A stretch of 64,000 bases of DNA from IMGVR_UViG_3300042473_001265:186001-250000; one strand, 5' to 3'; shown: positions 8,474-56,800, counted from the stretch's first letter. The notes: a model not told the origin generated them from the letters alone. Made by a program: numbers and translations.

Positions 8474-10300
8474 ATGGCTGAACAAAAATCAGTAGGTAAT
8501 GGCAGAAACGGCGGCTGGCGCAAGTATTTCAAAGTCGCCGACGGTGGCGCCAACGGACAACTCAGCCCTATTTCTGGAAACAACGCCAATGGTTTGCCTG
8601 GTTACAATCGACAAACTGGGTCGGGCAGCAACACAGCCACTGGCAACGATTTTGCTTTTCGCAACTATGCCAGCCGATTACCCGAAGTATATTCAGGTCA
8701 TCCCAACCGTGTCGAACGCTACAATCAATATGAAAACATGGACATGGATTCAGAGATCAATGCATGTCTGGACATCATTGCTGAGTTCAGCACACAAAAC
8801 AACGAAGACAACAATACTCCGTTTGACATAGTGTTCAAAGATACTCCCACTGACCACGAAGTGGAAATTATTAAAAAACAACTGCAACAATGGTGCAAGT
8901 TGAACAAACTGGACCAGCGCATGTTCAAGCTGTTTCGCAACACCATCAAGTATGGTGATCAAGTGTTTGTGCGCGACCCAGAAACATTTGAAATGTACTG
9001 GGTTGACATGGTCAAAGTCAGCAGAGTCATTGTGAATGAAAGCGAAGGCAAGCGTCCCGAGCAGTATGTTATCCGTGACATCAATCCCAACTTTGAAAAT
9101 CTAAGTATTGCTCCCAAAACCACCAGCGATTACTATGTGAGCCGTGCCACAGGATCTGTGGGGCAGAACAACTACTCGGCACCCAATGGCGGCGGTGGAG
9201 GCGGCTATGGTGGATCAGCCGGCAACAGCAGATTCACACAGGCCATGAACGAAACCACAGTGGATGCCAAGCATGTGGTACACCTGAGCTTGAACGAAGG
9301 TCTTGACTATTTTTGGCCGTTTGGACAGAGTATTTTAGAAAATATTTTCAAAGTTTACAAACAAAAAGAACTGTTGGAAGACTCAGTGCTGATATATCGT
9401 GTGAGTCGTGCTCCAGAACGCAGAGTGTTCAAGATTGACGTTGGCAACATGCCCAGCCACATGGCCATGGCCTTTGTGGAACGAGTAAAAAATGAAATGC
9501 ATCAGCGCAGAATTCCCACTGTGAGTGGTGGCGGTGCCAACATGATGGATGCTGCATACAATCCATTGAGCATCAACGAAGATTACTTTTTTCCGCAAAC
9601 AGCCGATGGTCGTGGCAGCAGCGTAGACACCTTGCCCGGTGGCACAGGATTAGGCGAAATTGACGATTTGAAGTATTTCAACAACAAAATGGCTCGTGGT
9701 CTGCGTGTGCCATCCAGCTATTTGCCCACTGGTCCCGACGACTCAGACCGTACAATGAACGACGGAAAAGTAGGCACAGCCCTGATACAAGAGTACAGAT
9801 TCAACCAATACTGTGAACGACTACAGCGTTTGATCATGCAAAAACTTGATGATGAATTCAAGATGTTTATGAAATGGCGTGGATTCAACATCGACAACAG
9901 CATTTTTGATATTGTGTTGGGTCCACCACAAAACTTTGCAAGTTATCGTCAAGCAGAAATGGACACCAGCCGTGTGAGTACATTTGGCGCATTGGAACAA
10001 TTGCCCTACATGAGCAAGCGTTTCTTGATGGAACGATACCTGGGTCTGAGTCAGGAAGAAATTACTGAAAACGCAAAACTTTGGAAAGAAGAGCGCGACG
10101 AGCCTGATCTGCAAACCACACAAGGGCAGGATCTGCGTAGTATTGGCATTACCCCAGCCGGCATGGAAAGTGATATTCAAGCTGGTGAAGCATTGGCTGC
10201 AATGCCGCCCGAAGGCAGTGCTGATGTAGGTGCAGTACCTGGTGCACCGCCTGGTCCTGGAACAGCACCCTCGGCTGTTCCTCCGCCGCCAACTGCATAA
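8474..10300 (+). CDS. gp20: Portal vertex protein
   Basis: LLEDSVLIYRVSRAPERRVFKIDVGNMP, EDYFFP, LPGG..LGEIDDLKYF, LRVPSS motifs. Confidence 0.95.
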   Translation: MAEQKSVGNGRNGGWRKYFKVADGGANGQLSPISGNNANGLPGYNRQTGSGSNTATGNDFAFRNYASRLPEVYSGHPNRVERYNQYENMDMDSEINACLDIIAEFSTQNNEDNNTPFDIVFKDTPTDHEVEIIKKQLQQWCKLNKLDQRMFKLFRNTIKYGDQVFVRDPETFEMYWVDMVKVSRVIVNESEGKRPEQYVIRDINPNFENLSIAPKTTSDYYVSRATGSVGQNNYSAPNGGGGGGYGGSAGNSRFTQAMNETTVDAKHVVHLSLNEGLDYFWPFGQSILENIFKVYKQKELLEDSVLIYRVSRAPERRVFKIDVGNMPSHMAMAFVERVKNEMHQRRIPTVSGGGANMMDAAYNPLSINEDYFFPQTADGRGSSVDTLPGGTGLGEIDDLKYFNNKMARGLRVPSSYLPTGPDDSDRTMNDGKVGTALIQEYRFNQYCERLQRLIMQKLDDEFKMFMKWRGFNIDNSIFDIVLGPPQNFASYRQAEMDTSRVSTFGALEQLPYMSKRFLMERYLGLSQEEITENAKLWKEERDEPDLQTTQGQDLRSIGITPAGMESDIQAGEALAAMPPEGSADVGAVPGAPPGPGTAPSAVPPPPTA

Positions 10301-10308
10301 ATACCTGT

Positions 10309-10530
10309 ATGATTTTAAACGAACTGTATCAGAAGCAACCTGAAGGATATCAAGATATTTCTCAGGACAACAGTCAGCCTCAACGAGGTCAGCTTCGTAA
10401 AACTCGTTTGACTTTGCGACAGTTGAGCAAATTGCGTCAGATGAATGATGTTAGAACCTTTGAGTACAAAGAAAAACTCAAAGACATTCGCAAACAGTAC
10501 GCACCTCCAGCAGCGCCACCAGGCCTGTAA
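10309..10530 (+). CDS. Small head-module protein
   Basis: 73-aa ORF between portal and scaffold genes, with TAAATA 5 nt upstream. Confidence 0.7.
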   Translation: MILNELYQKQPEGYQDISQDNSQPQRGQLRKTRLTLRQLSKLRQMNDVRTFEYKEKLKDIRKQYAPPAAPPGL

Positions 10531-10540
10531 ATTTCCTTCA

Positions 10541-14375: not shown

Positions 14376-14418
14376 TCAGAGATTGTTTGTTTTATTCATC
14401 TCAGGGATGGGAAGAATC

Positions 14419-14474: not shown

Positions 14475-14499
14475 AGAGCTTACTAACATAAATAAACAT

Positions 14500-15249
14500 A
14501 TGAACAAATATAACCAATGGTACAAAAATATTACAGAACAAGCTAAAAATCGTGTTCTGGAAACATATACTGAAAGTCATCATATAGTGCCTCGTAGTTT
14601 AGGTGGCAGTGATGACCCAGACAATCTAGTCAATCTTACAGCCAGAGAGCATTTTATTTGTCATTGGCTATTAGTTAAAATAACAGTAGGAGACTCTAGA
14701 TCTAAAATGATCTATGCTTTGCGTATGCTAAGAGCAGAAAAACACGGACAACAACGATATCATACCAAAATTACTAGTAGAGTTTATGAAAGTATTAAAC
14801 AAGAATATTCTAAAATAGCGTCAAACAACAGCATGGGAGAAAAAAATTCCATGTGGGGTAAAACACACACCCCAGAAGCAAGAGAAAAAATTAGACAAAA
14901 GAATTTAGGAAATAAACTAACACCAGACCAACATGCTAGATTGGTAGCAAACACAACTGGTAAAAAGAAACCTCCTATCACTGAAGCACATAGAGCAAAG
15001 TTATCTGATAATCATAAAAGCAAGCAACCTGATTTTAATGGGTCGTTGTCAGATGATACTCGTAAAAAAATTGGCGATAAAATTCGTGGTCGCAAACAGA
15101 CCGAAGAAGAAAAACTGGTTCGCAGTTTGGCCAACATGGGCAAGAAGCGTGAGAAACGACTCTGTCCGCACTGTGATCAACTAGTGGCAGTGAATGGGTA
15201 CGCTCGCTGGCACGGTGCCCATTGCCGCCACCGGATAAATATGTCATGA
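14500..15249 (+). mobile_element. Free-standing HNH homing endonuclease with NUMOD3 DNA-binding repeats
   Basis: ESHHIVPRSLGGSDDPDNLVNLTAREHFICHWLL; repeats MWGKTHTPEAREKI and similar. Start reassigned to ATG 14500, which follows TAAATA. Confidence 0.88.
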
Positions 15250-15380
15250 TCAACCAAATAAAATACTCGGGCCTGTTTCCAGAACCGCATATCAGTCCAG
15301 TGGGCACCGTCCTGGGACTTAATCAACCTCAACCGCAGCCAGCAGTGGTGCCAGTGGCGCAGCAGCCCGTTAAATCTTAA
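15246..15380 (+). CDS. 44-aa Pro/Gln/Val-rich small protein (below the ORF-track cutoff)
   Basis: MINQIKYSGLFPEPHISPVGTVLGLNQPQPQPAVVPVAQQPVKS*; TAAATA 4 nt upstream; ATGA overlap with the HNH stop. Confidence 0.55.
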   Translation: MINQIKYSGLFPEPHISPVGTVLGLNQPQPQPAVVPVAQQPVKS

Positions 15381-16530
15381 ACAGTTTCAAGTGTAGGTTG
15401 ATTCGTTTGACCACCGTAGCCCAGTCGCCCATTGCAGGTTGTCGGAATAGTCTGGCTGTGGCATACCACGGAGTATCGTCTCGGTTCAACAGCCAGCGCC
15501 AGCATAGTCCATAACTGTTCAGCATGATCCAAGTGGGCTTGCCCAGAGCAGCAGCCAAGTGTGCAGTAGCAGTGTCCACACTCACAACCACATCAAGATT
15601 GGTCATCAATGCAGCAGTGTCATTGAATGTGGGCAAGCCACCGGGAAAACAATGAACCCCTGCTGCTACCAATTGCGCTTGTTCCGCCGCGGTGCAATCC
15701 GTTTGCAAGTTGTACCAGTCATAGTCAGTGTTGGATTGGATCAACTCCAGCATGGTTTCAAATGGCATTCCCTTGTGTTGGTTGATCCAACTGTCCCTGC
15801 GTCCTGACCAGGCAAATCCCACTCGTAATTTATGCTTGGCGCCTAGGTTCCTTCGCCAATCGTCAATGAGATTACGATCGGGTTTTAAATACTGTATGGT
15901 TGAGGGCAAGTTTTCCACACGCACATTTATTCGACCCGGAATAGTCATCAAGGGAATCCAATAATCAAAATGATCACCAGGCGATTGCGTATAAGTCAAC
16001 ACTGTGACACCTTGTCCCACATCACTGCTTTGAATCAGTGTGACCATGGCATCAGTAACTTGTATGGTCACAACAGCACCAATGTTTTTTAAGTTTTGTA
16101 CAAATCGCACAAACTGTATGATATCACCATGACCTTGTTCGCCACGAACAAAAATAGTCTTGCCTGTCAATTCTTCACCGTTCCAAACGGGCCAAGGATA
16201 ATCAGGCAAGGTGCCTTTCAAATGTTCAAAGTTGTGTCTTGCTTCGTATGCAGGCCATCCACGCTCATAGTCACCACTCATCAAATAAGCAACAGCAAGA
16301 TTAAAGTGATTGGTCACTGTGCCAGGATCCAGCTGTATGGCTCGTTGGTTGAACGGAATGGCGCCCTCAGGATCTCCCAGTTCTCTCAACACATTGCCGT
16401 AGTTGTTGAATGCACTGGCACTAGATCGATCTCCAACCATGGCATGCATGTACTGCTGTAAGGCCAGTTCTGGTTGATGTTGTTCTCTAAAGGTGTTGCC
16501 CTGGGCAATGAGTAATTCTGTGTTTTGCAT
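15370..16530 (-). CDS. TPR-repeat protein with a GT-B (GT9-like) glycosyltransferase domain
   Basis: TPRs (AFNNYGNVLRELG, HFNLAVAYL), EQGHGDIIQFVRF, LDVVVSVDTATAHLAAALGKPTW, WYATARLFRQ. Start set at ATG 16530. Confidence 0.85.
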   Translation of the reverse strand: MQNTELLIAQGNTFREQHQPELALQQYMHAMVGDRSSASAFNNYGNVLRELGDPEGAIPFNQRAIQLDPGTVTNHFNLAVAYLMSGDYERGWPAYEARHNFEHLKGTLPDYPWPVWNGEELTGKTIFVRGEQGHGDIIQFVRFVQNLKNIGAVVTIQVTDAMVTLIQSSDVGQGVTVLTYTQSPGDHFDYWIPLMTIPGRINVRVENLPSTIQYLKPDRNLIDDWRRNLGAKHKLRVGFAWSGRRDSWINQHKGMPFETMLELIQSNTDYDWYNLQTDCTAAEQAQLVAAGVHCFPGGLPTFNDTAALMTNLDVVVSVDTATAHLAAALGKPTWIMLNSYGLCWRWLLNRDDTPWYATARLFRQPAMGDWATVVKRINLHLKLFKI

Positions 16531-16577
16531 GGCAATATTTACACAGTATTGGGGCAGGTTGAAAATATCATTACAGC

Positions 16578-16670
16578 TAAATAACACTAACGCAATACTG
16601 TGTTTTATGCGGCACACCAGCCGCGTAGTAGGCTAGAACCTGCATCGGACTTCTTTAAGGAGAAAACAAA
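16578..16670 (+). promoter_or_regulatory. Late promoter and structured 5' leader
   Basis: TAAATA at 16578-16583; hairpins at 16589-16604, 16606-16627 and 16628-16643; AAGGAG SD. Confidence 0.55.
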
Positions 16671-17486: not shown

Positions 17487-17515
17487 TAGTTCAGTTAGGT
17501 AATTTTCAACAGCCG

Positions 17516-17547
17516 ATCCCCGCAGTTAAATACTGTGGGGATTTTTT
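17516..17547 (+). terminator. Terminator hairpin carrying TAAATA in its loop
   Basis: ATCCCCGCAGT-TAAAT-ACTGTGGGGAT-TTTTT. Confidence 0.7.
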
Positions 17548-18135
17548 ATGACCGTAGCATTTGTGTTGGGAAACGGCGTCAGCAGGTCTGGCCTTCCGTT
17601 GGAACAGATTCAAAAATTGGGAAAAATTTATGGGTGTAATGCTCTCTACAGAGAGTTTACACCTGACGTTCTTGTGGCCACAGATCGTGCCATCGCTCAG
17701 CGAATACAAGAAACAGGATATTCTGCTAAAAATAAATTTTATACTCGCAAACCCATGGACGGCTTAGGTGCTCTGCGTGTGCCAACAGAATATTACGGAT
17801 TCAGTTCAGGTCCAAATGCAGTGGGCATTGCAGCCTTGGATCAGCACAATAAAATTTATATTCTAGGATTTGACATGGGACCAAGCGTACACAATCAATT
17901 CAACAACATATACGAAGGTACAGAGTTCTACAAGCCATCAGGATCCACACCCACTTATACTGGAAATTGGGTAAAACAATTGGCAAAGATAACAAAAGAT
18001 TTCTCAAACACCCAATTTATTCGCGTTTGCGGCAATACTACAGCACGATTACCAACTTTGGATAATATTACAAATTTGTCTCATGAGGATTTGGCCACCT
18101 TTCAAATGCGGATAAATAATCAAAAGGATCTATAA
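17548..18135 (+). CDS. Maf/DUF115 (MptE-like; glycosyltransferase-related fold) protein
   Basis: AFVLGNGVSR, YGCNALYR..PDVLVATD, SSGPNA, IYILGFDM. Confidence 0.6.
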   Translation: MTVAFVLGNGVSRSGLPLEQIQKLGKIYGCNALYREFTPDVLVATDRAIAQRIQETGYSAKNKFYTRKPMDGLGALRVPTEYYGFSSGPNAVGIAALDQHNKIYILGFDMGPSVHNQFNNIYEGTEFYKPSGSTPTYTGNWVKQLAKITKDFSNTQFIRVCGNTTARLPTLDNITNLSHEDLATFQMRINNQKDL

Positions 18136-27743: not shown

Positions 27744-27776
27744 GGCTAAATACAGCTAACAAACTGGAAAAAATCA

Positions 27777-28850
27777 ATGGGATTAACTAGACCTCGCGCC
27801 GCACAGATTTTTGATATAGACTACAAGCAAGCAACTCGTGTAATTACCGTTGCCAACATAACTTTGGCCGGCGGAGCTCCAGCAGTGGTCGACGGTGTCA
27901 GCTTGGTCTTGAACGATCGTGTATTGGTCACAGGTCAAACCACAGCCAGTCAAAACGGTTTGTATGATGTAACTGTGGTGGGTGTGGGATCTGACGGCAC
28001 CTGGGAAAGAACCAGCGATGGCAATCAAACAGGAGAAATTCTTGCCGGCATGATTGTCATGGTGACCGAAGGTACAATCTATGCTGACACACAGTGGAAA
28101 CTAATAACAGACAATCCCATTGTGATTGGAACAACTGCACTGACATTTGAACTCAACACCAGTGGCAATTCAATTTCCAATGGCACAAGCAACATAACAG
28201 TTCTAAACAATGCCAATGTCAATGTCACAGTGGCCAATGTTCAAATTGCTGCGTTTGCATCAACTGGATCGTATGTAACCGGATTGATTTCCGCAACTGG
28301 TAATGTTACTGTAGGTAATTTATTAACTGGGGGGATCATCAGTACCACTGGCAACATCACCGGTAACAATATTCTGGGCAATGGCGCTGCTCTTTCTGGC
28401 ATCAATGCGTTCAGCAACGTCACTGTCACTGGCGGAAACAGTGCAGTAGCAGACTCAATTTCCGATACTCTAACTTTAACAGCTGGCAGCGGTATTAGTA
28501 TTGTGATTGATTCAACCACAGATACCATAACCATTGGCACTCAACTTGGTAGTGAAATTTTTGTAGACGGCGCAGATTTTGGCACAGTAACTGAAACAGT
28601 GACCGTGAGTGACGATCTAGGGCTGGTCACTGCCGCCGTGGAGAGTGAAGCAGATCTTGGCACACTGGTGTTGTCGGGCCTGATCTATCCAGATCAGTTT
28701 GTTTTGCCCAGTTATACCACCAGTACATTGCCCAGCGCCGCAGTGACAGGCTCCATGATATATGTGACCAATGAATCTGGTGGAGCAGTGCCAGCCTTTG
28801 CTGACGGCACAAATTGGCGCAGGGTAACAGACCGTGCCATAATAACATAA
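27777..28850 (+). CDS. Tail-fibre-associated structural protein
   Basis: DGVSL..NDRVLVTGQT.ASQNGLY.V module, related to one in the 23055 gene. Confidence 0.72.
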   Translation: MGLTRPRAAQIFDIDYKQATRVITVANITLAGGAPAVVDGVSLVLNDRVLVTGQTTASQNGLYDVTVVGVGSDGTWERTSDGNQTGEILAGMIVMVTEGTIYADTQWKLITDNPIVIGTTALTFELNTSGNSISNGTSNITVLNNANVNVTVANVQIAAFASTGSYVTGLISATGNVTVGNLLTGGIISTTGNITGNNILGNGAALSGINAFSNVTVTGGNSAVADSISDTLTLTAGSGISIVIDSTTDTITIGTQLGSEIFVDGADFGTVTETVTVSDDLGLVTAAVESEADLGTLVLSGLIYPDQFVLPSYTTSTLPSAAVTGSMIYVTNESGGAVPAFADGTNWRRVTDRAIIT

Positions 28851-28870
28851 ATAGCATATAGGAATTTAAA

Positions 28871-29950
28871 ATGTCTTCACAAGTACAATACAGACGCGGA
28901 ACTAACGCACAAAATGCAGCATTCACCGGCGCCTTGGCTGAAATCACTGTGGACACCACAAATGGCACTTTGCGAGTGCATGATGCCATCACAGTGGGCG
29001 GTAGCAATATTGCCACAGTGGCTTATGTAACATCACAAATCAGTGCTCTAAGTGCCAATTCAATTACATCTGGTACCAGCAATTTTTCAATCATTGCCAG
29101 TGGCGGCAACATCCGTGGAAATGTAGGCGGAGCAACTGTAACAAATATTTATTCTGGTGGTATAGAACTGACTGGATTGCTCAGTGCCACAGGCAACGTC
29201 TCGGCTGAAAACTTAAATATCACAGGTAATATTGTTGACACAGGTGCATTGAGTATTATCACAGGCAGCAACGGAAACATTGCATTGTCGCCCAACGGCA
29301 CTGGTATGGTCAATATCAGCAGTGCGTTAAGTGTTACAGGCAACATTACCACTGGTAATTTACTCATAGGTGGTGCAATTCAAGACTATGCTCAATTGGA
29401 CATTCAGACCACTGCTGGCAATGCTAATATTGTGTTGACACCCAATGGTACCGGTAATGTTAATTTTGGCAGCAACATTATGCCAACTGCCAATGCCACT
29501 GCTAATATTGGCAGTGCCACTTCAAGTTTCAACACTGTGTTTGCCAAGGCCACATCGGCACAATACGCTGACTTGGCAGAAAATTATCTAGCTGATGCTG
29601 CATATGCCCCGGGCACCGTGATTGAATTTGGCGGCAACAGCGAAGTCACAGTATCTACTGTGGACCACAGCACAGCCGTTGCTGGTATTGTCAGCACAGA
29701 TCCTGCTTATTTGATGAATTCACATTTGCAAGGCGTTTATGCTGTGGCTGTTGCTTTGATCGGTCGTGTGCCGTGTCGAGTGCAGGGGCCTGTGAAAAAA
29801 GGATCTGTATTGGTCACCGGCACAGTTCCTGGAACAGCTATGGCCATTGATAATTTAAAATTTAAACCAGGCTGTGTGGTTGGCAAGGCAATGGAAACAA
29901 TTGATTCCGTTGATGTAAAAACTATTGAAGTGGCCGTTGGACGATTATGA
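28871..29950 (+). CDS. Fibre protein with Mtd-N-like N-terminus and C-terminal chaperone-like domain
   Basis: VQYRRGT..FTGALAEITVDT..LRVHD; YADLAENY..VALIGRVP..KG..VGKAM. Confidence 0.75.
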   Translation: MSSQVQYRRGTNAQNAAFTGALAEITVDTTNGTLRVHDAITVGGSNIATVAYVTSQISALSANSITSGTSNFSIIASGGNIRGNVGGATVTNIYSGGIELTGLLSATGNVSAENLNITGNIVDTGALSIITGSNGNIALSPNGTGMVNISSALSVTGNITTGNLLIGGAIQDYAQLDIQTTAGNANIVLTPNGTGNVNFGSNIMPTANATANIGSATSSFNTVFAKATSAQYADLAENYLADAAYAPGTVIEFGGNSEVTVSTVDHSTAVAGIVSTDPAYLMNSHLQGVYAVAVALIGRVPCRVQGPVKKGSVLVTGTVPGTAMAIDNLKFKPGCVVGKAMETIDSVDVKTIEVAVGRL

Positions 29951-33759: not shown

Positions 33760-33779
33760 ATAGTTATTTATCGCACCAC

Positions 33780-33808
33780 TTGACCAATAAATCCAGAAGT
33801 GCTACAAT
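33780..33808 (+). promoter_or_regulatory. Sigma70-type early promoter 1
   Basis: TTGACC-17 nt-TACAAT with TG extension. Confidence 0.7.
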
Positions 33809-33814
33809 GGCTGT

Positions 33815-34087
33815 ATGAAAGTAGTCAAACTGAACCGCAGATTTCGCCAATTCAAAGAACACGGGCACACCATTGCTCTAAGATTTCCCTCATACACTGA
33901 ATCTGTGCCATACGAAAAAACAACTCGCAATAAATTGGGCGTTGGCGGCTGGCAGCGGCATGATTCATGGTACAGTTACTTTGGACACGGTCGGGTTGCC
34001 GGGTACCGTCCGTACTGGATCACATTCCGCAACGAAGCAGATGCTACTTTAGTGTTGCTTTGTACTGACTTGACCAAAAATACATGA
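33815..34087 (+). CDS. Hypothetical early protein
   Basis: 90-aa ORF starting 6 nt after the -10 box. Confidence 0.65.
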   Translation: MKVVKLNRRFRQFKEHGHTIALRFPSYTESVPYEKTTRNKLGVGGWQRHDSWYSYFGHGRVAGYRPYWITFRNEADATLVLLCTDLTKNT

Positions 34088-34098
34088 AGTGCTATAAT
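34070..34098 (+). promoter_or_regulatory. Sigma70-type early promoter 2
   Basis: TTGACC-17 nt-TATAAT with TG extension. Confidence 0.8.
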
Positions 34099-34125
34099 TA
34101 ACACTTAAACAACAAAGGAGCCACT

Positions 34126-34416
34126 ATGTTAGCATTTGCCCCGCAAACACAAAAGCAATTTACCGCATTGTTGCAGTATGTAGATAAAAACAGGCCTGCC
34201 ATTGAGTCACGCAAAACAGCAGAATATAAACAGGCAGTGGCCAATGTGCGCGAGATAATGCGGGCATATTTTGCAGTTAATCCTCCTAAACTAACTGCTT
34301 TTTCCCCATGGAAACATTTGGGCACAAGAGATATGTGTGTGCAAATAGCAGAAAAATACAGTATCCCCATATGGGATATACGGGGAGAGGCAAACCCGTA
34401 TACTTACAGTAACTAA
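34126..34416 (+). CDS. Hypothetical early protein
   Basis: AAGGAG SD; has its own promoter and terminator. Confidence 0.7.
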   Translation: MLAFAPQTQKQFTALLQYVDKNRPAIESRKTAEYKQAVANVREIMRAYFAVNPPKLTAFSPWKHLGTRDMCVQIAEKYSIPIWDIRGEANPYTYSN

Positions 34417-34453: not shown

Positions 34454-34482
34454 TTGACAATAATTATCAAAACTGCTATAAT
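34454..34482 (+). promoter_or_regulatory. Sigma70-type early promoter 3 (perfect consensus)
   Basis: TTGACA-17 nt-TATAAT with TG extension. Confidence 0.88.
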
Positions 34483-34511
34483 TACACTAATTGAACAAAG
34501 GAGCTGACACA

Positions 34512-36468: not shown

Positions 36469-36531
36469 TAAAACCAGTTGTTTGAACAAACACTGCTAGG
36501 CAAATTGTCATAAATCTGTTATACTATCAGT

Positions 36532-38447: not shown

Positions 38448-38742
38448 TTTCAACTGTACAATTCAAACATACGGTCTTTAAATTGGTTGCATTGGTATTG
38501 TGCAGATTACTGTCTGCATGATATACCAACAACTGAGCTGCATATTTTGATTTGAACCCACACCGGTCACAGGTGGTTTTTTTCTTGTAGCCGGCTGATT
38601 GCCATCGAGCCACCGGAGGTTTGATGCGCCGTTTTTTCTTAATGCATTGATCGCATCGAGATCTATAGTGTGCCATGCCATCACGATAGTAGTTAACAGC
38701 ACACAGTCGTTGGCTGCAAGCAGTACACATTGGTCTTTCCAT
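38395..38742 (-). CDS. Zn-finger protein with a degenerate HNH-like motif
   Basis: CTAC, CDQC, CDRC, YHADSNLHN..NLKTVCLNC. Confidence 0.7.
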   Translation of the reverse strand: MERPMCTACSQRLCAVNYYRDGMAHYRSRCDQCIKKKRRIKPPVARWQSAGYKKKTTCDRCGFKSKYAAQLLVYHADSNLHNTNATNLKTVCLNCTVEIKKSDLPWQPGDLTPDF

Positions 38743-38837
38743 GATGTATTTACCATAAAACCTTTCCTAAAGGACAACATCGTGGCGGTTTTTCTGCGCA
38801 AGCGCTAAATATTAGCAACTAGGAAAAGGACCAGACC

Positions 38838-44777: not shown

Positions 44778-44810
44778 GCTACCCTAAACCGTAGATGCGG
44801 TAAATACGGC

Positions 44811-45317
44811 ATGACGAGAAAACTTGAAGAGCTTTTTGATTTGCCATCCGGCACCGCTGACACAGATGAAACTGTGACAGACATTGCGGCCACACAATAC
44901 AGCATAACAGAAATTGATTCGGCCATTGACAAAATTGATGCAGCCCTGCCCGGCATCCGCGACCTTGAAACCAGCGATAAAGAAATGGATGATTTGGCTG
45001 TCAAAGCAACAGAAACATTCGACGATCTAATGGATCTTGGCATGCAGGTGGACAGTCGTTATGCCAGCGAAATATTTGCTGTGGCCGGTGCCATGCTGGG
45101 TCATGCACTCACTGCCAAAACAGCCAAGATGAACAAGAAATTAAAGATGATTCAGTTGCAGTTACAAAAAGCCAAACTGGATCTTGACAAGGAAAAAGCT
45201 GCTGGTCACGACGACGATGACGACCCTGCTGCAACTGCCGAAGGACAAGTGCTGAGCCGCAATGATTTACTTGAGCGCTTGATTGGCACACGGGATCAAA
45301 AGAATAAACCTGCATAA
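44811..45317 (+). CDS. Helical protein, possible terminase small subunit
   Basis: DDLMDLGM..SEIFAVA..RNDLL pattern; late promoter. Assignment is tentative. Confidence 0.45.
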   Translation: MTRKLEELFDLPSGTADTDETVTDIAATQYSITEIDSAIDKIDAALPGIRDLETSDKEMDDLAVKATETFDDLMDLGMQVDSRYASEIFAVAGAMLGHALTAKTAKMNKKLKMIQLQLQKAKLDLDKEKAAGHDDDDDPAATAEGQVLSRNDLLERLIGTRDQKNKPA

Positions 45318-48913: not shown

Positions 48914-49548
48914 TGGCCAATCCACCACCACCATACGACAACATCACAGGCATCAGCCGTGCTGTGATGAAAGACAACGCACAAGAGACATTAGTCAACT
49001 ACGACGGTAATGCTCGTCCTGGCGAAATGACTGTTAATCTCACGAACAATAATGTATACATTGGTAATACTAACGGTGATTTAACGTTAATAGCTCGAGG
49101 TACTGGCTTATCGGCATACATTAATTACTTTGATTTCAGCAATGATTTAACTACAGGGCCGTTTGCTGATCCAATAGGCGGGCCAAATTGGATAAAACTA
49201 AATGCTAATACTACCTCGCCTTATTCTAGTGGCACACTAACTGCTACAAACAATCGAGTAACAAATACAGGCACAGTTTCTATGATAATTAAAATGGAAG
49301 GCATTATTTCTGTAGCACCTACATTAGACTACTCAGAGATTGGTGCTGCCTTTTTTCAAAATGAAACATTGATTCCATGTAGCGCACAAACAGTGTTATG
49401 TGGCCTTATTGGAGAGACATCAGCATTACCATTCCATTGCGTTACGCAACTAGACCCAGATGATTATGTTGAAGTTTGGGTTCAGAATATTTCAAATGAA
49501 ACCAGTATAACGCTAGACAATGTTAACGTAATTATTACTCAACTGTAA
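48913..49548 (+). CDS. Putative structural protein with a C1q/BclA-like beta-sandwich C-terminus
   Basis: RPGE..VN..YIG N-terminal motif; L...DYVEVWVQN. Confidence 0.55.
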   Translation: MANPPPPYDNITGISRAVMKDNAQETLVNYDGNARPGEMTVNLTNNNVYIGNTNGDLTLIARGTGLSAYINYFDFSNDLTTGPFADPIGGPNWIKLNANTTSPYSSGTLTATNNRVTNTGTVSMIIKMEGIISVAPTLDYSEIGAAFFQNETLIPCSAQTVLCGLIGETSALPFHCVTQLDPDDYVEVWVQNISNETSITLDNVNVIITQL

Positions 49549-49556
49549 ATAATAAC

Positions 49557-49994
49557 ATGAAAAAACTATTCTTACTATTATTGATCGTGCCTGTGCTGGC
49601 TGTTGCACAACCCCGACAAAAACCAGGCGTGACCTATGACGCTGTGATCACCAGAGTCATAGACGGCGATACAGTGGCTTTTCAAGCAGACTTTTTGCCT
49701 GCACCACTCAAAAAAGAACTCAGTATTCGTGTATACGGTGTGGACACTCCTGAAAAAGGACATCGTGCGGCTTGCCCAAGTGAAGCACAGCGTGGCGAAG
49801 CAGCAAGTGCATTTACCAAACAAGCTGTTGCAGCCAGCACCAAGCGTCAGGTTGTACTGATGGACTGGGACAAATACGGCGGCCGAGTGCTAGGCGACGT
49901 TTTACTCAACGGCCAAAGCCTGCGAGTCATGCTGATACAGAATGGATTTGCACGAGAATACTACGGCGAAGCCAAAACATCCTGGTGCAATTAA
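49557..49994 (+). CDS. Thermonuclease (SNase family) with signal peptide
   Basis: MKKLFLLLLIVPVLAVA; RVIDGDT, RVYGVDTPE, DKYGGRVLG. Confidence 0.9.
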   Translation: MKKLFLLLLIVPVLAVAQPRQKPGVTYDAVITRVIDGDTVAFQADFLPAPLKKELSIRVYGVDTPEKGHRAACPSEAQRGEAASAFTKQAVAASTKRQVVLMDWDKYGGRVLGDVLLNGQSLRVMLIQNGFAREYYGEAKTSWCN

Positions 49995-50024
49995 TCTCCC
50001 GTCAACACTGGTGAATAATTCAAA

Positions 50025-51059
50025 GTGAAAGTTTTTGACTTTATGAATCCCACTTCTTGTCAAGAAATTGTGGGAACTACCAATGCCTATCGCATGCTTC
50101 CAGACAACTCAATAGTGTTAATGGGTACTCCGTACACCACTATTGATCGAACCTCATGGGCAAACTACTATAAAAATTTGCAAACACTCAAGGATCAGTC
50201 AATTACAGATCGCTATGTGTTTATTGATGCCAGCTGTGATCCTCTGTGGTTCAGCAATCAAGCCATGCTGGATCATCTTGCTGCCACAAAAGAATTTTTT
50301 CCTAACGCCAAAGTTGCAGTTTTAACCAGTCGATGTCAAAACTGGTTTGATGATATTCCAGGATTGATATACTATCCATTTTTCTTTAATATTATATACA
50401 ATTCATATGAGCCACGACCAAGAGCTGGACGAATTGGCTGCCTCAATAGACAAAACAGTCCACATCGTGCCTGGCTCATGCACTCTTTGTTGAGTGAAAA
50501 TTTGATTGATTCTTCTCGGGACGTTTATAGTATAGGATTTGCCAATCCTTACGACCTTACATTTTACTGTAGATTAAGTTCGTTTATCGAGAACAGACAT
50601 GATCTCGATGAAGCTATCCAAAAATATCCACCGCAGATAGCCACACACCCAGATAATTTTCCCAACGACTACACTATCAATCATCCTGCTTGGCATACAG
50701 GCATTGCTGTGGTGACAGAAACTCATCCAGGTGACAAAACTTTGATTACTGAAAAAACAGCCAAAGCCATAATCAGCCAAAGTTGTTTTTCCATCTACAT
50801 GGCAGAAGCAGGCTACAAAGTTTTAGAAGAATTAGGCTTTGAGCCTAGATTTTTCCCTGACCATGCCAGCGAAACCAACATCGAACCCATTATACAACTG
50901 TGCAAAACCATTGACACTGAATCAGCAGCCATGGATTATAGACAACAGCACATGGACAAAATCAATCACAACGCAGAATGGTTCAATCAAGGTCCAGTAT
51001 TTGGGCCATGGTATGATCAATACAACCCAAAATTTCAACGCGACCTAGACCGTCTGTAA
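50025..51059 (+). CDS. Hypothetical protein (possible glycosyltransferase-like)
   Basis: CLNR...HR and VVTET...ITEKT.KAI..L.ELGF motifs. Confidence 0.5.
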   Translation: MKVFDFMNPTSCQEIVGTTNAYRMLPDNSIVLMGTPYTTIDRTSWANYYKNLQTLKDQSITDRYVFIDASCDPLWFSNQAMLDHLAATKEFFPNAKVAVLTSRCQNWFDDIPGLIYYPFFFNIIYNSYEPRPRAGRIGCLNRQNSPHRAWLMHSLLSENLIDSSRDVYSIGFANPYDLTFYCRLSSFIENRHDLDEAIQKYPPQIATHPDNFPNDYTINHPAWHTGIAVVTETHPGDKTLITEKTAKAIISQSCFSIYMAEAGYKVLEELGFEPRFFPDHASETNIEPIIQLCKTIDTESAAMDYRQQHMDKINHNAEWFNQGPVFGPWYDQYNPKFQRDLDRL

Positions 51060-51066
51060 ATACAGC

Positions 51067-52215
51067 ATGAGTAATTTTTATTGTGCTGCACCCTGGCGTG
51101 GCCTTCATATAAATGTCCGCGGTGACATCAAAACCTGTTGTGCCGGCAATCCCAACATGCTGGGCAATCTCAACAGCAAAACAATTGAACAAGTATTGAA
51201 CGGGCCAGAGCTAACAGAAATTAGAAAAACATTGAGTCAAGGCAAACAACATCCTTATTGCGTTAACTGTATCAATGCCGAAACAAACAGCACCAGCAGC
51301 GAGCGTGAATGGCACAACAATATAAATGAGGGCTTTGATACTACACAAGCCGGCGACAATTACGATTTCCCCGCACTGCTTGATATAAGATGGAATACCA
51401 CTTGTAATCTAAGCTGTAATTATTGTGGACCACTGGACAGTTCAACATGGTCTGCACTTAAAAAAATACCAATAAACACCAGCACTAGAAAATACTATGA
51501 AGATGTATGTGATTTTATTGCCAAACATCAGCAGCATGTAAAAGAAGTAGCACTGGTTGGTGGCGAACCCTTGCTGCTGCCAGAAAATGAAAGATTGCTG
51601 GATGTGCTGCCAGAAGATTGTGTGATAACTGTCATTACCAATCTGAGCAATCCATTGGAAAACAACAAAATATTTAAAAAACTAGCTCAACGAAAAAATG
51701 TTGGGTGGAGCATGAGTTTTGATAATATTGGTCCGCAATTTGAATATGTACGCCACGGCGCAGCTTGGTCTATGATTTTACATAATCTTGACATCTTGCA
51801 ATCCATCATGAATGATCCTGCTCGCAAGCACTGGGGAGGGATACATGCAGTTTATAATTTATACAATGCCACAAGACTGTGCGACCTCAAACAATTTGCT
51901 GTGGATAGAGGATTGTCAATACACTGGCAAAATCTTGGCGGCAACATAGCACTTGATACTCGCAAACACGGTGTTGAGATTGCTGCCAAGGCCGCCGCGG
52001 AAATTGAAAAATTTTTTGCCACATTTGATCCAAGTGAAGAAGAAAAAATGTTGTTTGGTGCTGCCCTGCAACACTATCGGTCTATAACCAATTCCAAACC
52101 AGACATGATTGCAGTATTACAAAAATTTGTGTCAGACATTGAAGATGTTTACCATCCTGATGCCAAAGGTCAATTTGCCGCACTGTGGCCGGAGTTAAAT
52201 AAAAATTATGGCTAA
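51067..52215 (+). CDS. Radical SAM protein with N-terminal SPASM/twitch-like domain
   Basis: YCAAPW..TCC..CVNC; CNLSCNYC; GGEPLL; ITNLS. Confidence 0.88.
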   Translation: MSNFYCAAPWRGLHINVRGDIKTCCAGNPNMLGNLNSKTIEQVLNGPELTEIRKTLSQGKQHPYCVNCINAETNSTSSEREWHNNINEGFDTTQAGDNYDFPALLDIRWNTTCNLSCNYCGPLDSSTWSALKKIPINTSTRKYYEDVCDFIAKHQQHVKEVALVGGEPLLLPENERLLDVLPEDCVITVITNLSNPLENNKIFKKLAQRKNVGWSMSFDNIGPQFEYVRHGAAWSMILHNLDILQSIMNDPARKHWGGIHAVYNLYNATRLCDLKQFAVDRGLSIHWQNLGGNIALDTRKHGVEIAAKAAAEIEKFFATFDPSEEEKMLFGAALQHYRSITNSKPDMIAVLQKFVSDIEDVYHPDAKGQFAALWPELNKNYG

Positions 52216-53782: not shown

Positions 53783-53806
53783 TGCTAAAACTTTAATAAA
53801 TACACT

Positions 53807-56800
53807 ATGGCACAAAATAATCCAGGACAACAACTTTCAGACCTTTTGGTCACCCGCGGCTACGACCCAGAGATGCTGGACAGCGCAGGCAAAGCAGCGC
53901 CCACAGCACAAGATGCTGAAATTTTCAGCTTTGATTTTGTCACAGCAAATGGCACCAATCACGGATCAGTGGTTGTGATGCTGGGCGATGATAAAGAATT
54001 AACTGTGTTCAGCGGCGACAATGTTGGCCGTAACATGGACAGCGAAGACAAAACAGAATGGTACGAGTTTCAGCATCAATTGAAAAACTTTGCCACAAAG
54101 AATTTTATGACATTTGCTAGTCAAAACATCAACAAACTCAAATACAGCATGCAAGGGCAAGCAGCCCTTAAAGAAGGCCTGTGCGAAAGTTGGAACGGCA
54201 CAAAGAATGTCAGTTGGAACGGTGGTCCTGATTCTGTTCGACTGATGATACGTCACAAGCGTCCAATGGGCATTGACGAAGCCAGATTTCGTCAGGTAGA
54301 AAGTCTGTTTGTAGAAACCGCAGATGGTGAACGCTACCGATTGCCATTCCGCAATCTAGCCGGCGGTCGTGCCATGGTCGAACATGTTCGTCAAGGCGGT
54401 AAGCCATATGACATGCGCGGCCACCATATTGCTACCATAATTGAAGAACTCAATGTGCTGAGTCGTTTCCGCAGAGCCAGCAAAGGCCAAGTGTTTGAAG
54501 GCGACACAGCCAATTTGATAGCAGAAGCCAATAACTACTACGAAACAATGTGTCGAACCGTAAAAGGACTGTCATCCAGCAAAGGATACAACAGCTATTT
54601 TGAAAGCTGGAATCCTGGCAATATAACTGAACAAGATTTGATCATTGAAGATATCAAAACATTATTCGTGCAAGAAACAATTGATTCACGAATTGAACAG
54701 GCCCTACCTATCCTGGCCCGCATACAACAACAAGGAACCGCTATGAAAGAAGCAAACATATTTGAAGCCTGGGCTGAACGCCTGTTAGAAGGCACATGGG
54801 CAACACCAAATACCCCAGAACAAAAAGAACAGTTGATTGAGTTACTGTCACAAGAACTGCCAGTCGGACCTGACGCCACCAATGCAACAGAACAGTTGTA
54901 CAGTTTGTTTGGCGATGACGAATTGTTTGATCAGTTGCAAGAACTGGCCGAAACCGATCCCGACGCTGATGCTCGTGAAATAGTCATTGCTCGTATGACA
55001 GAATTGGCAGACAGCGGATCAGATCCTGACCTTATGGAAGTACTTGCTGCGTTAGAACCCACAGTGCCTGAACCACAAGCTGCGGCCAACCCAGAAGCCG
55101 TAGTGGAAAGTTGGGTAGGCAATATTGTAAATACCGCTAAATCTATGTTTGCTAAAAATGCAGACCCGGTACCAGTGAGTGAATCTGCAGAACTCAACAC
55201 CATACTGAAGTATGCTGGCATTCCATTAAGAGAAGGCGTGTTAGATGACGTCAGAGCCAGAATGGATGCAAGACGCAATCCTGCTGCAACTCCTGCTACT
55301 GCACAGCCGGCACAATCTCCTACTACACAGGCACCTAAATTCAAAGTTGGGGACACTGTGAGTTTTGGTATAGGTAGAGGCATACCGAGCACCGGTACAA
55401 TTACTGCTATGGGTCCAGGCCCTACTCAACTGACTGTTAAAACTGCTGAGGGTGAGAATCAATTAGATACCAGAATGAAAAGTCTGTATCTACAGTTAGT
55501 ACCGTCAACAACATCTGCAGAGTCCCAACAATCAACACCTGATCTGCCGCGGGCAGAAGTGGTGTCCACAATGGGCATGCCTAGCCGATCTCTGATTGGT
55601 TATAAAGACAACACATATACACCTTCAGGACCATATACCAAGGCGCCAGAGGGTGCAACCGGAACACAAGTACTTGTGCCTGCCGCAGCATTTGGTATTA
55701 GAAGCATGGGTGATGTTGTTGCTTTGCTAACTGACGATGGTACAGCCTATGCTGAACAACCAATAAAAGTGTCTAATCCTTTTGGTCGAGCAGCAGGCAG
55801 CGCAAGTCGTCAACCAAACCCAACACAAGGGCTAGACGAAGCTGGTGAGTGGAAAGCAGAAGCCGAAGACTTTAAAGAATGGTCAAACCATGTCAAAGAC
55901 TCATTGCTTGGTGTTGCTCCAAGTCAACGATTTGCTATGGCAAAACGACTAAGTCAAATTGAAATGAAACATTTTGGCGACAGTCAGGCAGCTAGCTCAT
56001 TCAATGCACAAACAGGCCGACCAACGGGCAATACCAGTGGCATGACAACCACAGTACAACACATCTTGGATGCAATTAACGATGGTAAACTTACCAATGC
56101 AAGCTCGCCGGATGCTGCTGCTGCTGTAGCCAGTGGCGGAACTACACAACAAACACCGTTTGGATCAGTTACTAGACCAGCAGGCCAACCAGATCCGTAT
56201 CAAGCATCACCCGCTTTGCCTAACGGCGACCGTCCGGCTGCTGTTGCTGCACAGAATCGACCAAGACCACAAAAAGGCGGCGGCAGTATCCAAATATTAA
56301 AAACTGAAGAAGATTGGGAAGAAGCGTTAAGTAACCCTGACCTAGGGCGCGACTTAGACGCTGATAATCGTCCAACAACTGCTGCTGGACTTGATTCGGC
56401 AATGTCAAAATTACCAAGTTGGAAAGTAATGCTGGCAACTATTATAATGGGTTCAAAACTTCCTATCATTGGTGACAAGATAAAAAATACAATAGTATCG
56501 TCAATTGAAAAAGAGTTTGGAGTACGCATGTCTTTTAAAGATGCACTGGAATATATGAAGCATGTTAGAAATACTCCAGCTGCACAAATTGTACCACCAG
56601 CTGTTTGGAAGTTTGAAAGAGATGGCGGCGATTATGAAACTGCCATTGAGCAATTGCCCGATGACGCAGTAGACGTACAACCAGCAGAAGTTATGTCTAC
56701 CATTGCAACTGACTTGATCGACGCTGGAGTAGCCCAAGAGATCAAACCCGGAGACGAAACTCCAAGCAATGCTGGCGCAGATGCATTTGGTAATATGGCA

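What the first reader, a model, noticed from the sequence alone, without database searches (positions are those of the whole stretch)
10298..53809. TAAATA-N4/5-ATG: widespread leaderless late transcripts
Seen: TAAATA lies exactly 4-5 nt before the start codon, with no room for an SD, at ten genes: ATG 10309, 14500, 15246, 44811, 49557, 51067, 53807 (+) and 16530, 33759, 38742 (-). Other late genes have TAAATA further upstream plus an SD. Established: T4 gp55 late promoters are TATAAATA, with initiation a few nt downstream. Inference: a shortened late consensus and two translation classes, leaderless and SD-led. This corrects several start codons and hints at a host that translates leaderless mRNA well.
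Basis: partly seen in the sequence, partly recalled or inferred. Interest (0 to 1): 0.6.

Follow-up and report, generated by a model that had tools for sequence, protein, structure and literature searches.

The report
Leaderless genes in a jumbo phage
In this uncultured 340-kb T4-related jumbo phage and its close metagenomic relatives, about one gene in ten has its promoter pressed directly against the start codon, so the mRNA very probably begins at the AUG with no ribosome-binding site; this holds for late and early-type promoters alike and has not been described for T4-type phages.

Summary
All ten TAAATA-N4/5-ATG sites are where stated. The window has 12 matches against 1.6 expected; 10 are gene starts and 2 are not.

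In the whole 340,172-bp phage genome, ATG follows TAAATA at spacers 4, 5 and 6 in 11, 13 and 11 cases against about 3 per spacer. Nearly all open long ORFs at their first start codon.

The leaderless reading is well supported in silico.
- The phage has a gp55-type late sigma.
- Full sigma70-type promoters (TTGAC-N17-TATAAT) show the same two-class pattern: ATG at N6/7, or at N24-32 with a Shine-Dalgarno (SD) sequence, and almost none between.
- Position -1 is a pyrimidine in 85% of leaderless starts, against 46% of SD-led starts.
- Only ATG is enriched.
- Divergent gene pairs and terminator-promoter-ATG arrangements leave no room for a leader.
- Orthologues in 80 metagenomic relatives keep TAAATA-N5-ATG while the flanks diverge, or switch to TAAATA-N19 plus an SD.

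T4, Vibrio phage 2.275.O and PA5oct lack the pattern, so it is specific to this clade.

No transcription start sites (TSS) could be mapped, and the host is unknown. The three large genomes of the clade also encode an IF1 homologue. I rate it a new variant of known kinds (gp55-type late promoter; leaderless mRNA).

The parts
10298..10311 (+). Late promoter element TAAATA, N5, then the ATG of a 73-aa gene (10309-10530). The TAA of the motif is also the stop codon of the portal gene (8474-10300).
   Evidence: Among 48 distinct orthologous upstream regions, 34 have N5, 3 have N4, about 7 have N6-7, and 4 have switched to an upstream TAAATA (about N17-24) plus an SD. The gene at the same position after the portal gene in PA5oct is an MS-detected structural protein.
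14489..14502 (+). TAAATA-N5-ATG of a homing endonuclease gene (14500-15249, 249 aa). This corrects the longest-ORF start (TTG at 14383).
   Evidence: phrog_655, 3e-50. About 9 of 12 orthologues begin at the same ATG after ATAAATA-N5.
15236..15248 (+). TAAATA-N4-ATG of a 44-aa ORF (15246-15380). Its ATG overlaps the upstream stop codon (ATGA).
   Evidence: In the four loci with this gene, TAAATA precedes the ATG by 4, 4, 5 and 8 nt. In two of them it lies directly after a hairpin plus T-run terminator.
16528..16541 (-). TAAATA-N5-ATG of a 386-aa gene (15370-16530, minus strand). It is the first gene of a divergent unit. This corrects the GTG starts at 16617 and 16587.
   Evidence: Orthologues keep TAAATA 4-5 nt upstream of the ATG.
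33757..33770 (-). TAAATA-N5-ATG of a virion structural protein gene (32434-33759, 441 aa). It is divergent from the gene at 33815, with 55 bp between the two ATGs.
   Evidence: (phrog_11591, 5e-79). Orthologues in G001 and G002 have TAAATA at N18 and N20 instead; my strict SD pattern scored no SD there.
33780..33817 (+). Sigma70-type leaderless unit: TTGACC, N17 (with TGn), TACAAT, N6, then the ATG of a 90-aa gene (33815-34087).
38740..38752 (-). TAAATA-N4-ATG of a 115-aa HNH-like gene (38395-38742). It is divergent from the tail sheath gene.
   Evidence: The G001 orthologue has TAAATA-N5-ATG.
44801..44813 (+). TAAATA-N4-ATG of a 168-aa gene (44811-45317). The ATG lies 33 nt after the upstream stop codon.
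   Evidence: The G001 orthologue has TAAATA-N5-ATG.
49546..49559 (+). TAAATA-N5-ATG of a 145-aa nuclease gene (49557-49994). The TAA of the motif is the stop codon of the upstream gene.
   Evidence: phrog_452, 2e-20.
51057..51069 (+). TAAATA-N4-ATG of a radical SAM gene (51067-52215, 382 aa). The TAA of the motif is the stop codon of the upstream gene.
52196..52210 (+). TAAATA-N6-ATG of the large terminase subunit (52208-53782).
   Evidence: The G002 orthologue has TAAATA-N5-ATG and the G001 orthologue has TAAATA at N27.
53797..53809 (+). TAAATA-N4-ATG of a 1320-aa virion-like protein gene (53807-57769).
   Evidence: The G002 orthologue has TAAATA-N5-ATG.
8442..8476 (+). Leadered late promoter: TAAATA, N26 with AAGGA, then the ATG of the portal gene.
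28848..28873 (+). Leadered late promoter: TAAATA, N17 with AGGAA, then ATG (28871). Others of the same kind are at 18113, 19474, 35673, 38806 (tail sheath), 42191, 45315 and probably 6103 (serving 6144). The motif at 27747 (N24) has only a weak SD-like purine run.
   Evidence: These share the flank bias of the leaderless sites: A-enriched at -1, T-depleted at -2, and A-rich 5-7 nt downstream.
34070..34128 (+). Leadered sigma70-type promoter: TTGACC-N17-TATAAT, N27 with AAGGAG, then ATG. A second one lies at 34454-34514 (N29).
17518..17550 (+). A TAAATA that is not a promoter. It sits in the loop of a terminator hairpin that is followed by a T-run.

Best explanation
The window is the structural-gene region of an uncultured 340-kb jumbo myovirus of the Rak2/PA5oct branch of T4-related phages.

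TAAATA, usually preceded by A, is the -10-like element of late promoters. These are read by host RNA polymerase carrying the phage's gp55-type sigma. At about half of these promoters the element lies 4-6 nt (mode 5) upstream of an ATG. Transcription then starts at, or within 1-2 nt of, the A of the start codon, and the mRNA is translated as a leaderless message with no Shine-Dalgarno (SD) pairing. At the other half the element lies about 16-26 nt upstream and the short leader carries an SD.

The phage's sigma70-type promoters have the same two architectures. Roughly 40 of about 420 genes are therefore leaderless.

Shown directly:
- the motif, its spacing statistics and their bimodality;
- the absence of an SD at these starts and the restriction to ATG;
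- the pyrimidine bias at position -1;
- conservation of the arrangement, and switching between the two forms, in relatives;
- the gp55 homologue.

Inferred:
- that the gp55-type sigma reads TAAATA;
- the exact transcription start sites;
- that the transcripts are translated in leaderless mode.
For: (1) Enrichment and real gene starts. The window has 12 matches against 1.6 expected. The genome-wide peak at N4-6 has p about 8e-11. Of the 24 ATGs at N4-5, 21 open ORFs of 44 codons or more.

(2) A second promoter class shows the same pattern. For TTGAC-N17-TAnnnT promoters, the distance to the first long-ORF ATG is bimodal: 12 cases at N6-7, about 30 at N24-32 with a stereotyped SD leader, and almost none at N8-21. 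N6 is the distance at which sigma70 promoters start transcription. The mode for TAAATA (N5) is one nucleotide shorter, as expected if it aligns with T4's TATAAATA at -13 to -6 (established knowledge; PMC2988020 and PMC7892883 place the element at the -10 position).

(3) Position -1 is a pyrimidine in 33 of 39 leaderless starts against 73 of 159 SD-led starts (Fisher p 1e-5). In relative G001 the figures are 28 of 34 against 79 of 206 (p 2e-6). This matches the pyrimidine(-1)/purine(+1) preference at transcription start sites.

(4) Only ATG is enriched, not GTG or TTG. None of the leaderless starts has an SD-like motif.

(5) Some arrangements leave no room for a leader. Divergent first genes are found in the window at 16530(-), 33759(-)/33815(+) (55 bp apart) and 38742(-). 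In the genome they are found at 259247(-)/259285(+), with 37 bp holding two back-to-back motifs, at 269749(-)/269827(+), and at 307156(-). Intrinsic terminator, then TAAATA, then N4-5, then ATG occurs once in this genome, five times in G001 and G002, and in two further relatives.

(6) Evolution. In 80 IMG/VR relatives (major capsid protein 78-100% identical) the peak is N4=29 and N5=87 of 657 motifs. For the gene after the portal gene, the motif columns and the ATG are conserved while the flanks are near random. Four lineages have instead an upstream TAAATA followed by an AGGAAA- or GGAG-type SD. Orthologues in G001 and G002 keep the leaderless form in about half the cases or switch to the leadered form.

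(7) Start codon anchored by homology. The phage IF1 homologue starts MAKEE at the TAAATA-N5 ATG and aligns from residue 1 with bacterial IF1.

(8) A gp55-type sigma is present: phrog_12791 at 3e-73, and T4 gp55 at E 8.7e-7.

(9) Leaderless and leadered TAAATA sites share flank biases that intragenic TAAATA copies lack.
Against: No transcription start site is mapped. The only RNA data found were Logan contigs of one lake metatranscriptome, derived from relatives. Some of these contigs run across the ATGs at 51067, 52208 and 53807, so read-through RNA (or contaminating DNA) also covers these starts.

About half of the late leaderless candidates lie within 25 nt of a co-directional upstream stop codon. 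Termination-reinitiation could contribute to their translation there.

The pyrimidine bias at -1 is not significant in relative G002.

No gp45 homologue was found using the T4 protein as query, so late activation may differ from T4.

The host and its capacity to translate leaderless mRNA are unknown.
Confidence: 0.8

Rival explanations
1. TAAATA is a late promoter or an incidental junction motif, but these genes are translated mainly from longer polycistronic transcripts. Ribosomes finishing the upstream gene reinitiate (translational coupling or 70S scanning) at the nearby ATG, so no SD is needed. The leaderless transcript, if made at all, is minor.
For: Several sites lie 7-8 nt after the upstream stop, or overlap the upstream gene: 10309, 15246, 49557, 51067 and 52208 in the window, and genome 20676 and 23160. 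In five cases the TAA of the motif is that stop codon. Metatranscriptome contigs span the ATGs at 51067, 52208 and 53807.
Against: Coupling cannot apply to the divergent first genes, to genes preceded by a terminator, or to the roughly 16 late and nearly all sigma70-type cases that lie more than 20-30 nt from any upstream stop. It does not explain the fixed motif-to-ATG distance, the pyrimidine at -1, the parallel N6 peak for full sigma70 promoters, or the appearance of an SD whenever the motif moves upstream.
Confidence: 0.12
2. TAAATA acts at the RNA level. It would be an A/U-rich translational enhancer, or a binding site for ribosomal protein S1 or a phage factor, that replaces the SD 4-6 nt upstream of the start codon inside ordinary leadered mRNAs.
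For: A/U-rich elements upstream of start codons can enhance translation (general knowledge). The motif sits roughly where an SD would be.
Against: One-mismatch variants are not enriched, which is too strict for an A/U-rich enhancer. The same motif with the same flank bias also occurs 16-26 nt upstream of SD-led genes. A different DNA element with a clear -35 box shows the same arrangement at its own characteristic distance. Terminator-motif-ATG cases and 37-bp divergent regions leave no upstream RNA.
Confidence: 0.05
3. The pattern is chance or an annotation artefact. The ATGs would not be real starts, and the pattern would reflect base composition or stop-codon context.
For: TAAATA itself is not over-represented. 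Two of the 12 window matches are not gene starts.
Against: None of 100 shuffles reaches 12 matches. Poisson p is about 8e-11 genome-wide. Long ORFs open at these ATGs. Protein N-termini are conserved from residue 1. The arrangement is conserved in diverged relatives.
Confidence: 0.01

Closest known systems
T4 gp55-dependent late promoters (TATAAATA at the -10 position, no -35 element)
   Same: An A/T-rich -10-like element with no conserved -35. A gp55-family sigma is encoded by the phage. The element sits upstream of structural and packaging genes. Single-base variants are not tolerated.
   Different: The core is 6-7 bp, (A)TAAATA; the full TATAAATA occurs only 5 times in the genome. In T4 the element lies 13-32 nt from the ATG and never abuts it. 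Here half of the elements abut the ATG. The sigma is 338 aa against 185 aa in T4. No gp45 homologue was detected with the T4 protein.
Predicted ATAAATA late motif of the Rak2-like jumbo phages CBB and GAP32 (PMC5259590)
   Same: The same clade, judged by capsid, portal and sheath proteins. The same motif, the same association with structural genes, and a gp55-like sigma.
   Different: That paper does not mention a leaderless class. The cultured relatives tested here, Vibrio phage 2.275.O and PA5oct, show no N4-6 peak.
Leaderless mRNAs, such as lambda cI from PRM and the widespread leaderless transcripts of Actinobacteria, Deinococcus-Thermus and Thermus phages (the last from memory, not checked here)
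   Same: A -10 element at the distance that puts +1 on the A of AUG, a strict AUG start, and no SD.
   Different: Here two sigma classes (host-type and gp55-type) both produce them in one phage, and the trait marks a clade of T4-related jumbo phages. The transcriptome studies of the jumbo phages phiKZ and AR9 read here reported no leaderless transcripts (PMC8244752, PMC5312081).

Membership tests
T4-type (gp55-dependent) late promoter | A conserved A/T-rich -10-like box related to TATAAATA | tested here: met
   TAAATA is invariant. Position -1 is A-enriched and position -2 is T-depleted at promoter-positioned copies only. The full 8-mer is rare, with 5 copies, so this is a shortened variant.
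T4-type (gp55-dependent) late promoter | No conserved -35 element | tested here: met
   Columns -30 to -13 of 48 orthologous upstream regions carry less than 0.4 bit each.
T4-type (gp55-dependent) late promoter | The phage encodes a gp55-family sigma | tested here: met
   G000:180643-181659, 338 aa. phrog_12791 at 3e-73, phrog_234 at 2e-22, T4 gp55 at E 8.7e-7.
T4-type (gp55-dependent) late promoter | [quoted passage not shown] | tested here: inconclusive
   T4 gp45 used as a query found nothing in the genome. A diverged clamp cannot be excluded. gp33 was not searched for. The CBB paper likewise found neither.
T4-type (gp55-dependent) late promoter | Transcription starts about 6 nt downstream of the box, late in infection | not testable with these tools
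   No raw-read RNA data exist for this phage. Indirect support: the region 5-7 nt after the motif is A-rich at leadered sites, and the A of the ATG falls there at leaderless sites.
Leaderless mRNA | The transcript's 5' end lies at or within a few nt of the start codon | not testable with these tools
   Inferred from promoter geometry in two promoter classes, the pyrimidine at -1, terminator-promoter-ATG arrangements and 37-77 bp divergent regions.
Leaderless mRNA | AUG start codon and no Shine-Dalgarno sequence | tested here: met
   ATG is enriched but GTG and TTG are not. None of 39 leaderless starts has an SD-like motif.
Leaderless mRNA | The ATG is the true start of the protein | tested here: met
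   Orthologue N-termini align from residue 1. The IF1 homologue aligns from residue 1 with bacterial IF1.
Sigma70-type promoter (leaderless subclass) | -35 TTGACA-like box, 17 +/- 1 bp spacer, -10 TATAAT-like box | tested here: met
   For example TTGACC-N17-TATAAT at genome 3235, 5879 and 295852, and TTGACC-N17-TACAAT at window 33780-33808. Many have TGn.

The most novel reading that the evidence does not exclude
The leaderless architecture is an adaptation specific to this clade and is coupled to a phage-encoded translation initiation factor IF1.

All three large genomes of the clade (this one, G001 and G002) encode an IF1 homologue. T4, Vibrio phage 2.275.O and PA5oct have neither IF1 nor the leaderless pattern.

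IF1 is reported to stimulate leaderless and 70S-scanning initiation in vitro (PMC9031893). The phage may therefore retune host ribosomes so that a tenth of its genes, early and late, can dispense with ribosome-binding sites. In this genome the IF1 gene itself is a TAAATA-N5-ATG late gene.
Probability: 0.2. Interest if true: 0.75.

Novelty: new variant of a known kind. Interest (0 to 1): 0.58.

Why it matters
Gene annotation. Start-codon callers that rely on ribosome-binding sites will miscall or miss about 10% of genes in this widespread clade of uncultured jumbo phages. The starts at 14500 and 16530 are examples.

Phage transcription. T4-type late transcription has been a model system for decades, and to my knowledge and in the literature searched here its mRNAs are leadered. 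A branch where half the gp55-type promoters, and a quarter of the sigma70-type ones, fire directly on the AUG shows that the system tolerates, or exploits, coupling of promoter and start codon. It also gives compact 15-nt promoter-plus-start modules.

Host and translation. The sharp clade boundary makes the trait a marker of either an unidentified host that translates leaderless mRNA efficiently or of a phage factor such as IF1 that enables it. Both ideas can be tested.

Tried and rejected
RNA evidence. The look-up of sequencing runs found a single lake-water metatranscriptome holding 6% of the sampled words. Read laying showed only short Logan contigs from relatives (85-99% identical). These cannot show 5' ends and may include DNA. 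They count neither for nor against the leaderless reading.

Host identification through the phage IF1. The best bacterial matches are at most 65% identical and are scattered over many phyla, including Chloroflexota, Desulfobacterota, Gemmatimonadota and Actinomycetota. No host can be inferred.

Other phage-encoded translation factors. There is no ribosomal protein S21 and no IF3 C-terminal domain. The two tRNA-Met(CAT) genes lack initiator features: their 1:72 positions are paired and there is no run of three G-C pairs in the anticodon stem.

gp45 clamp. The T4 protein found nothing.

DNA-level relatives among cultured phages. There are none. Protein-level relatives exist, but the closest ones with full genomes, Vibrio phage 2.275.O and PA5oct, do not share the pattern.

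Literature. No paper in the library links gp55-type or Rak2-like late promoters to leaderless mRNA.

Degenerate motif variants are not enriched at the leaderless position.

Full report
WHAT THE WINDOW IS

The window is bases 186,001-250,000 of a single 340,172-bp IMG/VR virus record. CheckV estimates it at 98% complete, and its GC content is 44.6%.

The window encodes a portal protein, a prohead protease or scaffold, the major capsid protein, a tail sheath, the large terminase subunit and many virion proteins. The capsid protein is 62-66% identical to those of the Rak2/PA5oct group of T4-related jumbo phages: Vibrio phage 2.275.O, PA5oct, Serratia BF, GAP32 and Yersinia fHe-Yen9-04. No cultured phage matches at the DNA level.

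IMG/VR holds many closer relatives, with capsid proteins 78-100% identical. The one RNA run that holds related sequence is a lake-water metatranscriptome.

THE OBSERVATION

TAAATA-N4/5-ATG occurs 12 times in the window against 1.6 +/- 1.4 in shuffles, with none of 100 shuffles reaching 12. TAAATA alone is not enriched.

Genome-wide there are 186 TAAATA motifs. ATG follows at spacers 4, 5 and 6 in 11, 13 and 11 cases, against about 3.1 per spacer elsewhere (p about 8e-11). Of the 24 ATGs at spacers 4-5, 21 open ORFs of 44 codons or more, usually as the first start codon of the ORF.

GTG and TTG show no peak. TAAATA is the commonest hexamer at this offset upstream of first ATGs, ahead of any SD hexamer, and its one-mismatch variants are not enriched.

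Two of the 12 matches (6103 and 15886) are not gene starts. A third TAAATA, at 17527, is the loop of a terminator hairpin.

It occurs at 8442, 18113, 19474, 28848, 35673, 38806, 42191 and 45315. The motif at 27747 (N24) is followed by only a weak SD-like purine run.

A SECOND, INDEPENDENT PROMOTER CLASS SHOWS THE SAME PATTERN

TATAAT also shows a sharp peak of long-ORF ATGs, at spacers 6-7. These sites are full sigma70-type promoters: TTGACC, a 17-bp spacer that often carries TGn, then TATAAT.

For 117 matches to TTGAC-N17-19-TAnnnT, the distance to the first long-ORF ATG is bimodal. Twelve lie at N6-7. About 30 lie at N24-32, with a peak at 30 and a stereotyped leader ending in AGGAG. Only two fall between N8 and N21.

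N6 places the A of the ATG at the seventh base after the -10 hexamer. This is the canonical sigma70 start position (established knowledge).

The window holds one such unit, TTGACC-N17-TACAAT-N6-ATG at 33780-33817. It also holds two leadered units, at 34070-34128 and 34454-34514.

The TAAATA mode (N5) is one base shorter. That is what is expected if TAAATA corresponds to the last six bases of T4's TATAAATA at about -13 to -6. The reviews read here place the element at the -10 position. The exact numbering is from memory.

FURTHER LINES OF EVIDENCE THAT TRANSCRIPTION STARTS AT THE ATG

(a) The base before the ATG is a pyrimidine in 33 of 39 leaderless candidates, against 73 of 159 SD-led genes (p 1e-5). 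In relative G001 the figures are 28 of 34 against 79 of 206 (p 2e-6). In G002 the difference is not significant. This matches the pyrimidine(-1)/purine(+1) preference at start sites. In the 48 orthologous upstream regions of gene 10309, position -1 is T in 79%.

(b) Several leaderless candidates are the first genes of divergent units with very short intergenic regions. In the window these are 16530(-), 33759(-)/33815(+) (55 bp apart) and 38742(-). In the genome they are 259247(-)/259285(+), where 37 bp hold two back-to-back TAAATA motifs, 269749(-)/269827(+) (77 bp), and 307156(-).

(c) An intrinsic terminator (GC-rich hairpin plus T-run) is followed within about 10 nt by TAAATA-N4/5-ATG. This occurs once in this genome, five times in G001 and G002, and in two further relatives for the orthologue of the gene at 15246.

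(d) Leaderless and leadered TAAATA sites share flank biases: A-enriched at -1 and T-depleted at -2. Intragenic copies lack these biases. Leadered sites are A-rich 5-7 nt after the motif, which is where the A of the ATG sits in the leaderless class.

(e) None of the 39 leaderless starts has an SD-like motif.

THE SIGMA FACTOR

A 338-aa protein is encoded at genome 180,643-181,659, about 5 kb upstream of the window. It matches 'sigma factor for late transcription' (phrog_12791, 3e-73; phrog_234, 2e-22) and T4 gp55 (E 8.7e-7). Its own gene has a sigma70-type promoter, an SD leader and a GTG start. No gp45 homologue was found with the T4 protein.

COMPARATIVE EVIDENCE

The 80 IMG/VR loci around the capsid gene total 876 kb. 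In them, TAAATA is followed by a long-ORF ATG at N4 in 29 cases and at N5 in 87 cases, out of 657 motifs. There is a second broad peak at N17-21.

For the small gene after the portal gene (10309), there are 48 distinct orthologous upstream regions, with protein identity down to 42%.
- 34 have N5.
- 3 have N4.
- About 7 have N6-7.
- 4 have instead a TAAATA roughly 17-24 nt upstream followed by an AGGAAA- or GGAG-type SD.

The six motif columns and the ATG are conserved, and the flanks carry almost no information.

Two relatives were read whole: G001 (374 kb, 100% complete) and G002 (303 kb, 86% complete). Both show both peaks. For TAAATA at N4/N5/N6 the counts are 12/14/5 and 11/9/2. For TATAAT at N6 they are 16 and 9. 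T4 and Vibrio phage 2.275.O show neither peak; their TAAATA-to-ATG distances cluster at about 23-32 nt. PA5oct shows no enrichment of the pattern over its control.

Orthologues of this genome's leaderless genes in G001 and G002 keep the leaderless form in about half the cases. Otherwise they carry a leadered or some other start. The Vibrio phage orthologues are SD-led.

The architecture is therefore evolutionarily labile within a defined clade and absent outside it.

START-CODON CHECKS

The phage encodes an IF1 homologue (PF01176, 63.9 bits) at genome 20,676-20,894. Its ATG follows TAAATA-N5. The protein begins MAKEE and aligns from residue 1 with bacterial IF1. It also aligns from residue 1 with the G001 and G002 copies, which are SD-led.

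Orthologues of the genes at 14500 and 16530 begin at the ATG after the motif. The longest-ORF starts (TTG 14383; GTG 16617 and 16587) are therefore wrong.

RIVAL EXPLANATIONS

Termination-reinitiation could help at the co-directional sites that lie 7-8 nt after the upstream stop or overlap the upstream gene (10309, 15246, 49557, 51067, 52208). Contigs of the metatranscriptome do cross some of these ATGs. Reinitiation cannot explain the divergent or terminator-preceded cases, the fixed spacing, the pyrimidine at -1, or the sigma70 parallel.

An RNA-level A/U-rich enhancer is contradicted by four results.
- The motif is strict.
- It also occurs upstream of SD leaders.
- The sigma70 class shows the same arrangement.
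- Some arrangements leave no upstream RNA.

Chance is excluded.

COMPARISON WITH WHAT IS KNOWN

The ATAAATA late motif and a gp55-like sigma were already predicted for the Rak2-like phages CBB and GAP32 (PMC5259590). PA5oct promoters were described as TTGAC/TATAATA (PMC7318152). Neither paper mentions leaderless genes.

The transcriptome studies of the jumbo phages phiKZ and AR9 read here report no leaderless transcripts. Leaderless mRNAs as such are well known. Examples are lambda cI, Actinobacteria and Deinococcus-Thermus, and, from memory, Thermus phages.

The new elements are these:
- gp55-type late promoters abutting the AUG;
- the same solution for two sigma classes in one phage;
- about 40 of about 420 genes affected;
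- a sharp clade boundary.

I rate it a new variant of known kinds.

OPEN POINTS

No transcription start site is mapped. The host is unknown: the IF1 matches are at most 65% identical and scattered across phyla.

IF1 is present in the three large genomes of the clade. It is absent from T4, Vibrio phage 2.275.O and PA5oct. IF1 is reported to stimulate leaderless and 70S-scanning initiation in vitro (PMC9031893). With six genomes this co-occurrence is a lead, not a finding.

Noticed in passing
Genome G000:C1:20676-20894 (outside the window); L147:1480-1698: The phage encodes a translation initiation factor IF1 homologue (72 aa, PF01176 63.9 bits). The gene is itself a TAAATA-N5-ATG gene. Homologues are present in relatives G001 and G002, where they are SD-led. 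They are absent from T4, Vibrio phage 2.275.O and PA5oct.
   Followed up: partly
Genome G000:C1:101006-111767 (outside the window): A cluster of 30 tRNA genes plus an ARAGORN tmRNA call. Neither tRNA-Met(CAT) has initiator features. One 90-nt tRNA called as Ile(TAT) has a long variable arm.
   Followed up: partly
Genome-wide, e.g. G000:C1:14084, 119875, 296141, 336491; window 34070-34128 and 34454-34514: About 25-30 copies of a stereotyped early cassette: TTGACC-N17-(TGn)TATAAT followed by a near-identical leader of about 30 nt ending in AGGAG. It looks like a repeated promoter-plus-leader module in front of small genes.
   Followed up: partly
Window 14500-15249 and 38395-38742: Homing or HNH endonuclease genes sit among the structural genes, after the capsid gene and before the sheath gene. 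Each carries its own TAAATA-adjacent start. They are probably mobile insertions that bring a promoter-plus-start module with them.
   Followed up: partly
Window 49989-51049: One metatranscriptome contig from a relative joins 49988 to 51050 with 7 other letters between. That relative therefore lacks the 344-aa gene at 50025-51059, an insertion/deletion polymorphism between relatives.
   Followed up: no
Genome G000:C1:259247-259285 (outside the window): Two divergent genes (254 and 243 aa) have start codons only 37 bp apart. The gap holds two TAAATA motifs on opposite strands, 16 bp from each other.
   Followed up: partly
L102:994-2010 (genome 180643-181659): The gp55-type late sigma is 338 aa, nearly twice the length of T4 gp55 (185 aa). 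The T4-like part lies in residues of about 90-295. The N-terminal extension has no assigned function.
   Followed up: no
Window 36490-36534: A possible weak sigma70-type leaderless unit: TAGGCA-N17-TATACT-N6-ATG in front of a 174-aa gene (36532-37056).
   Followed up: no
Window 17505-17550: The gene at 17548 starts directly after a terminator T-run, with no SD and no promoter-like element other than the TAAATA in the hairpin loop. How it is expressed is unclear.
   Followed up: no
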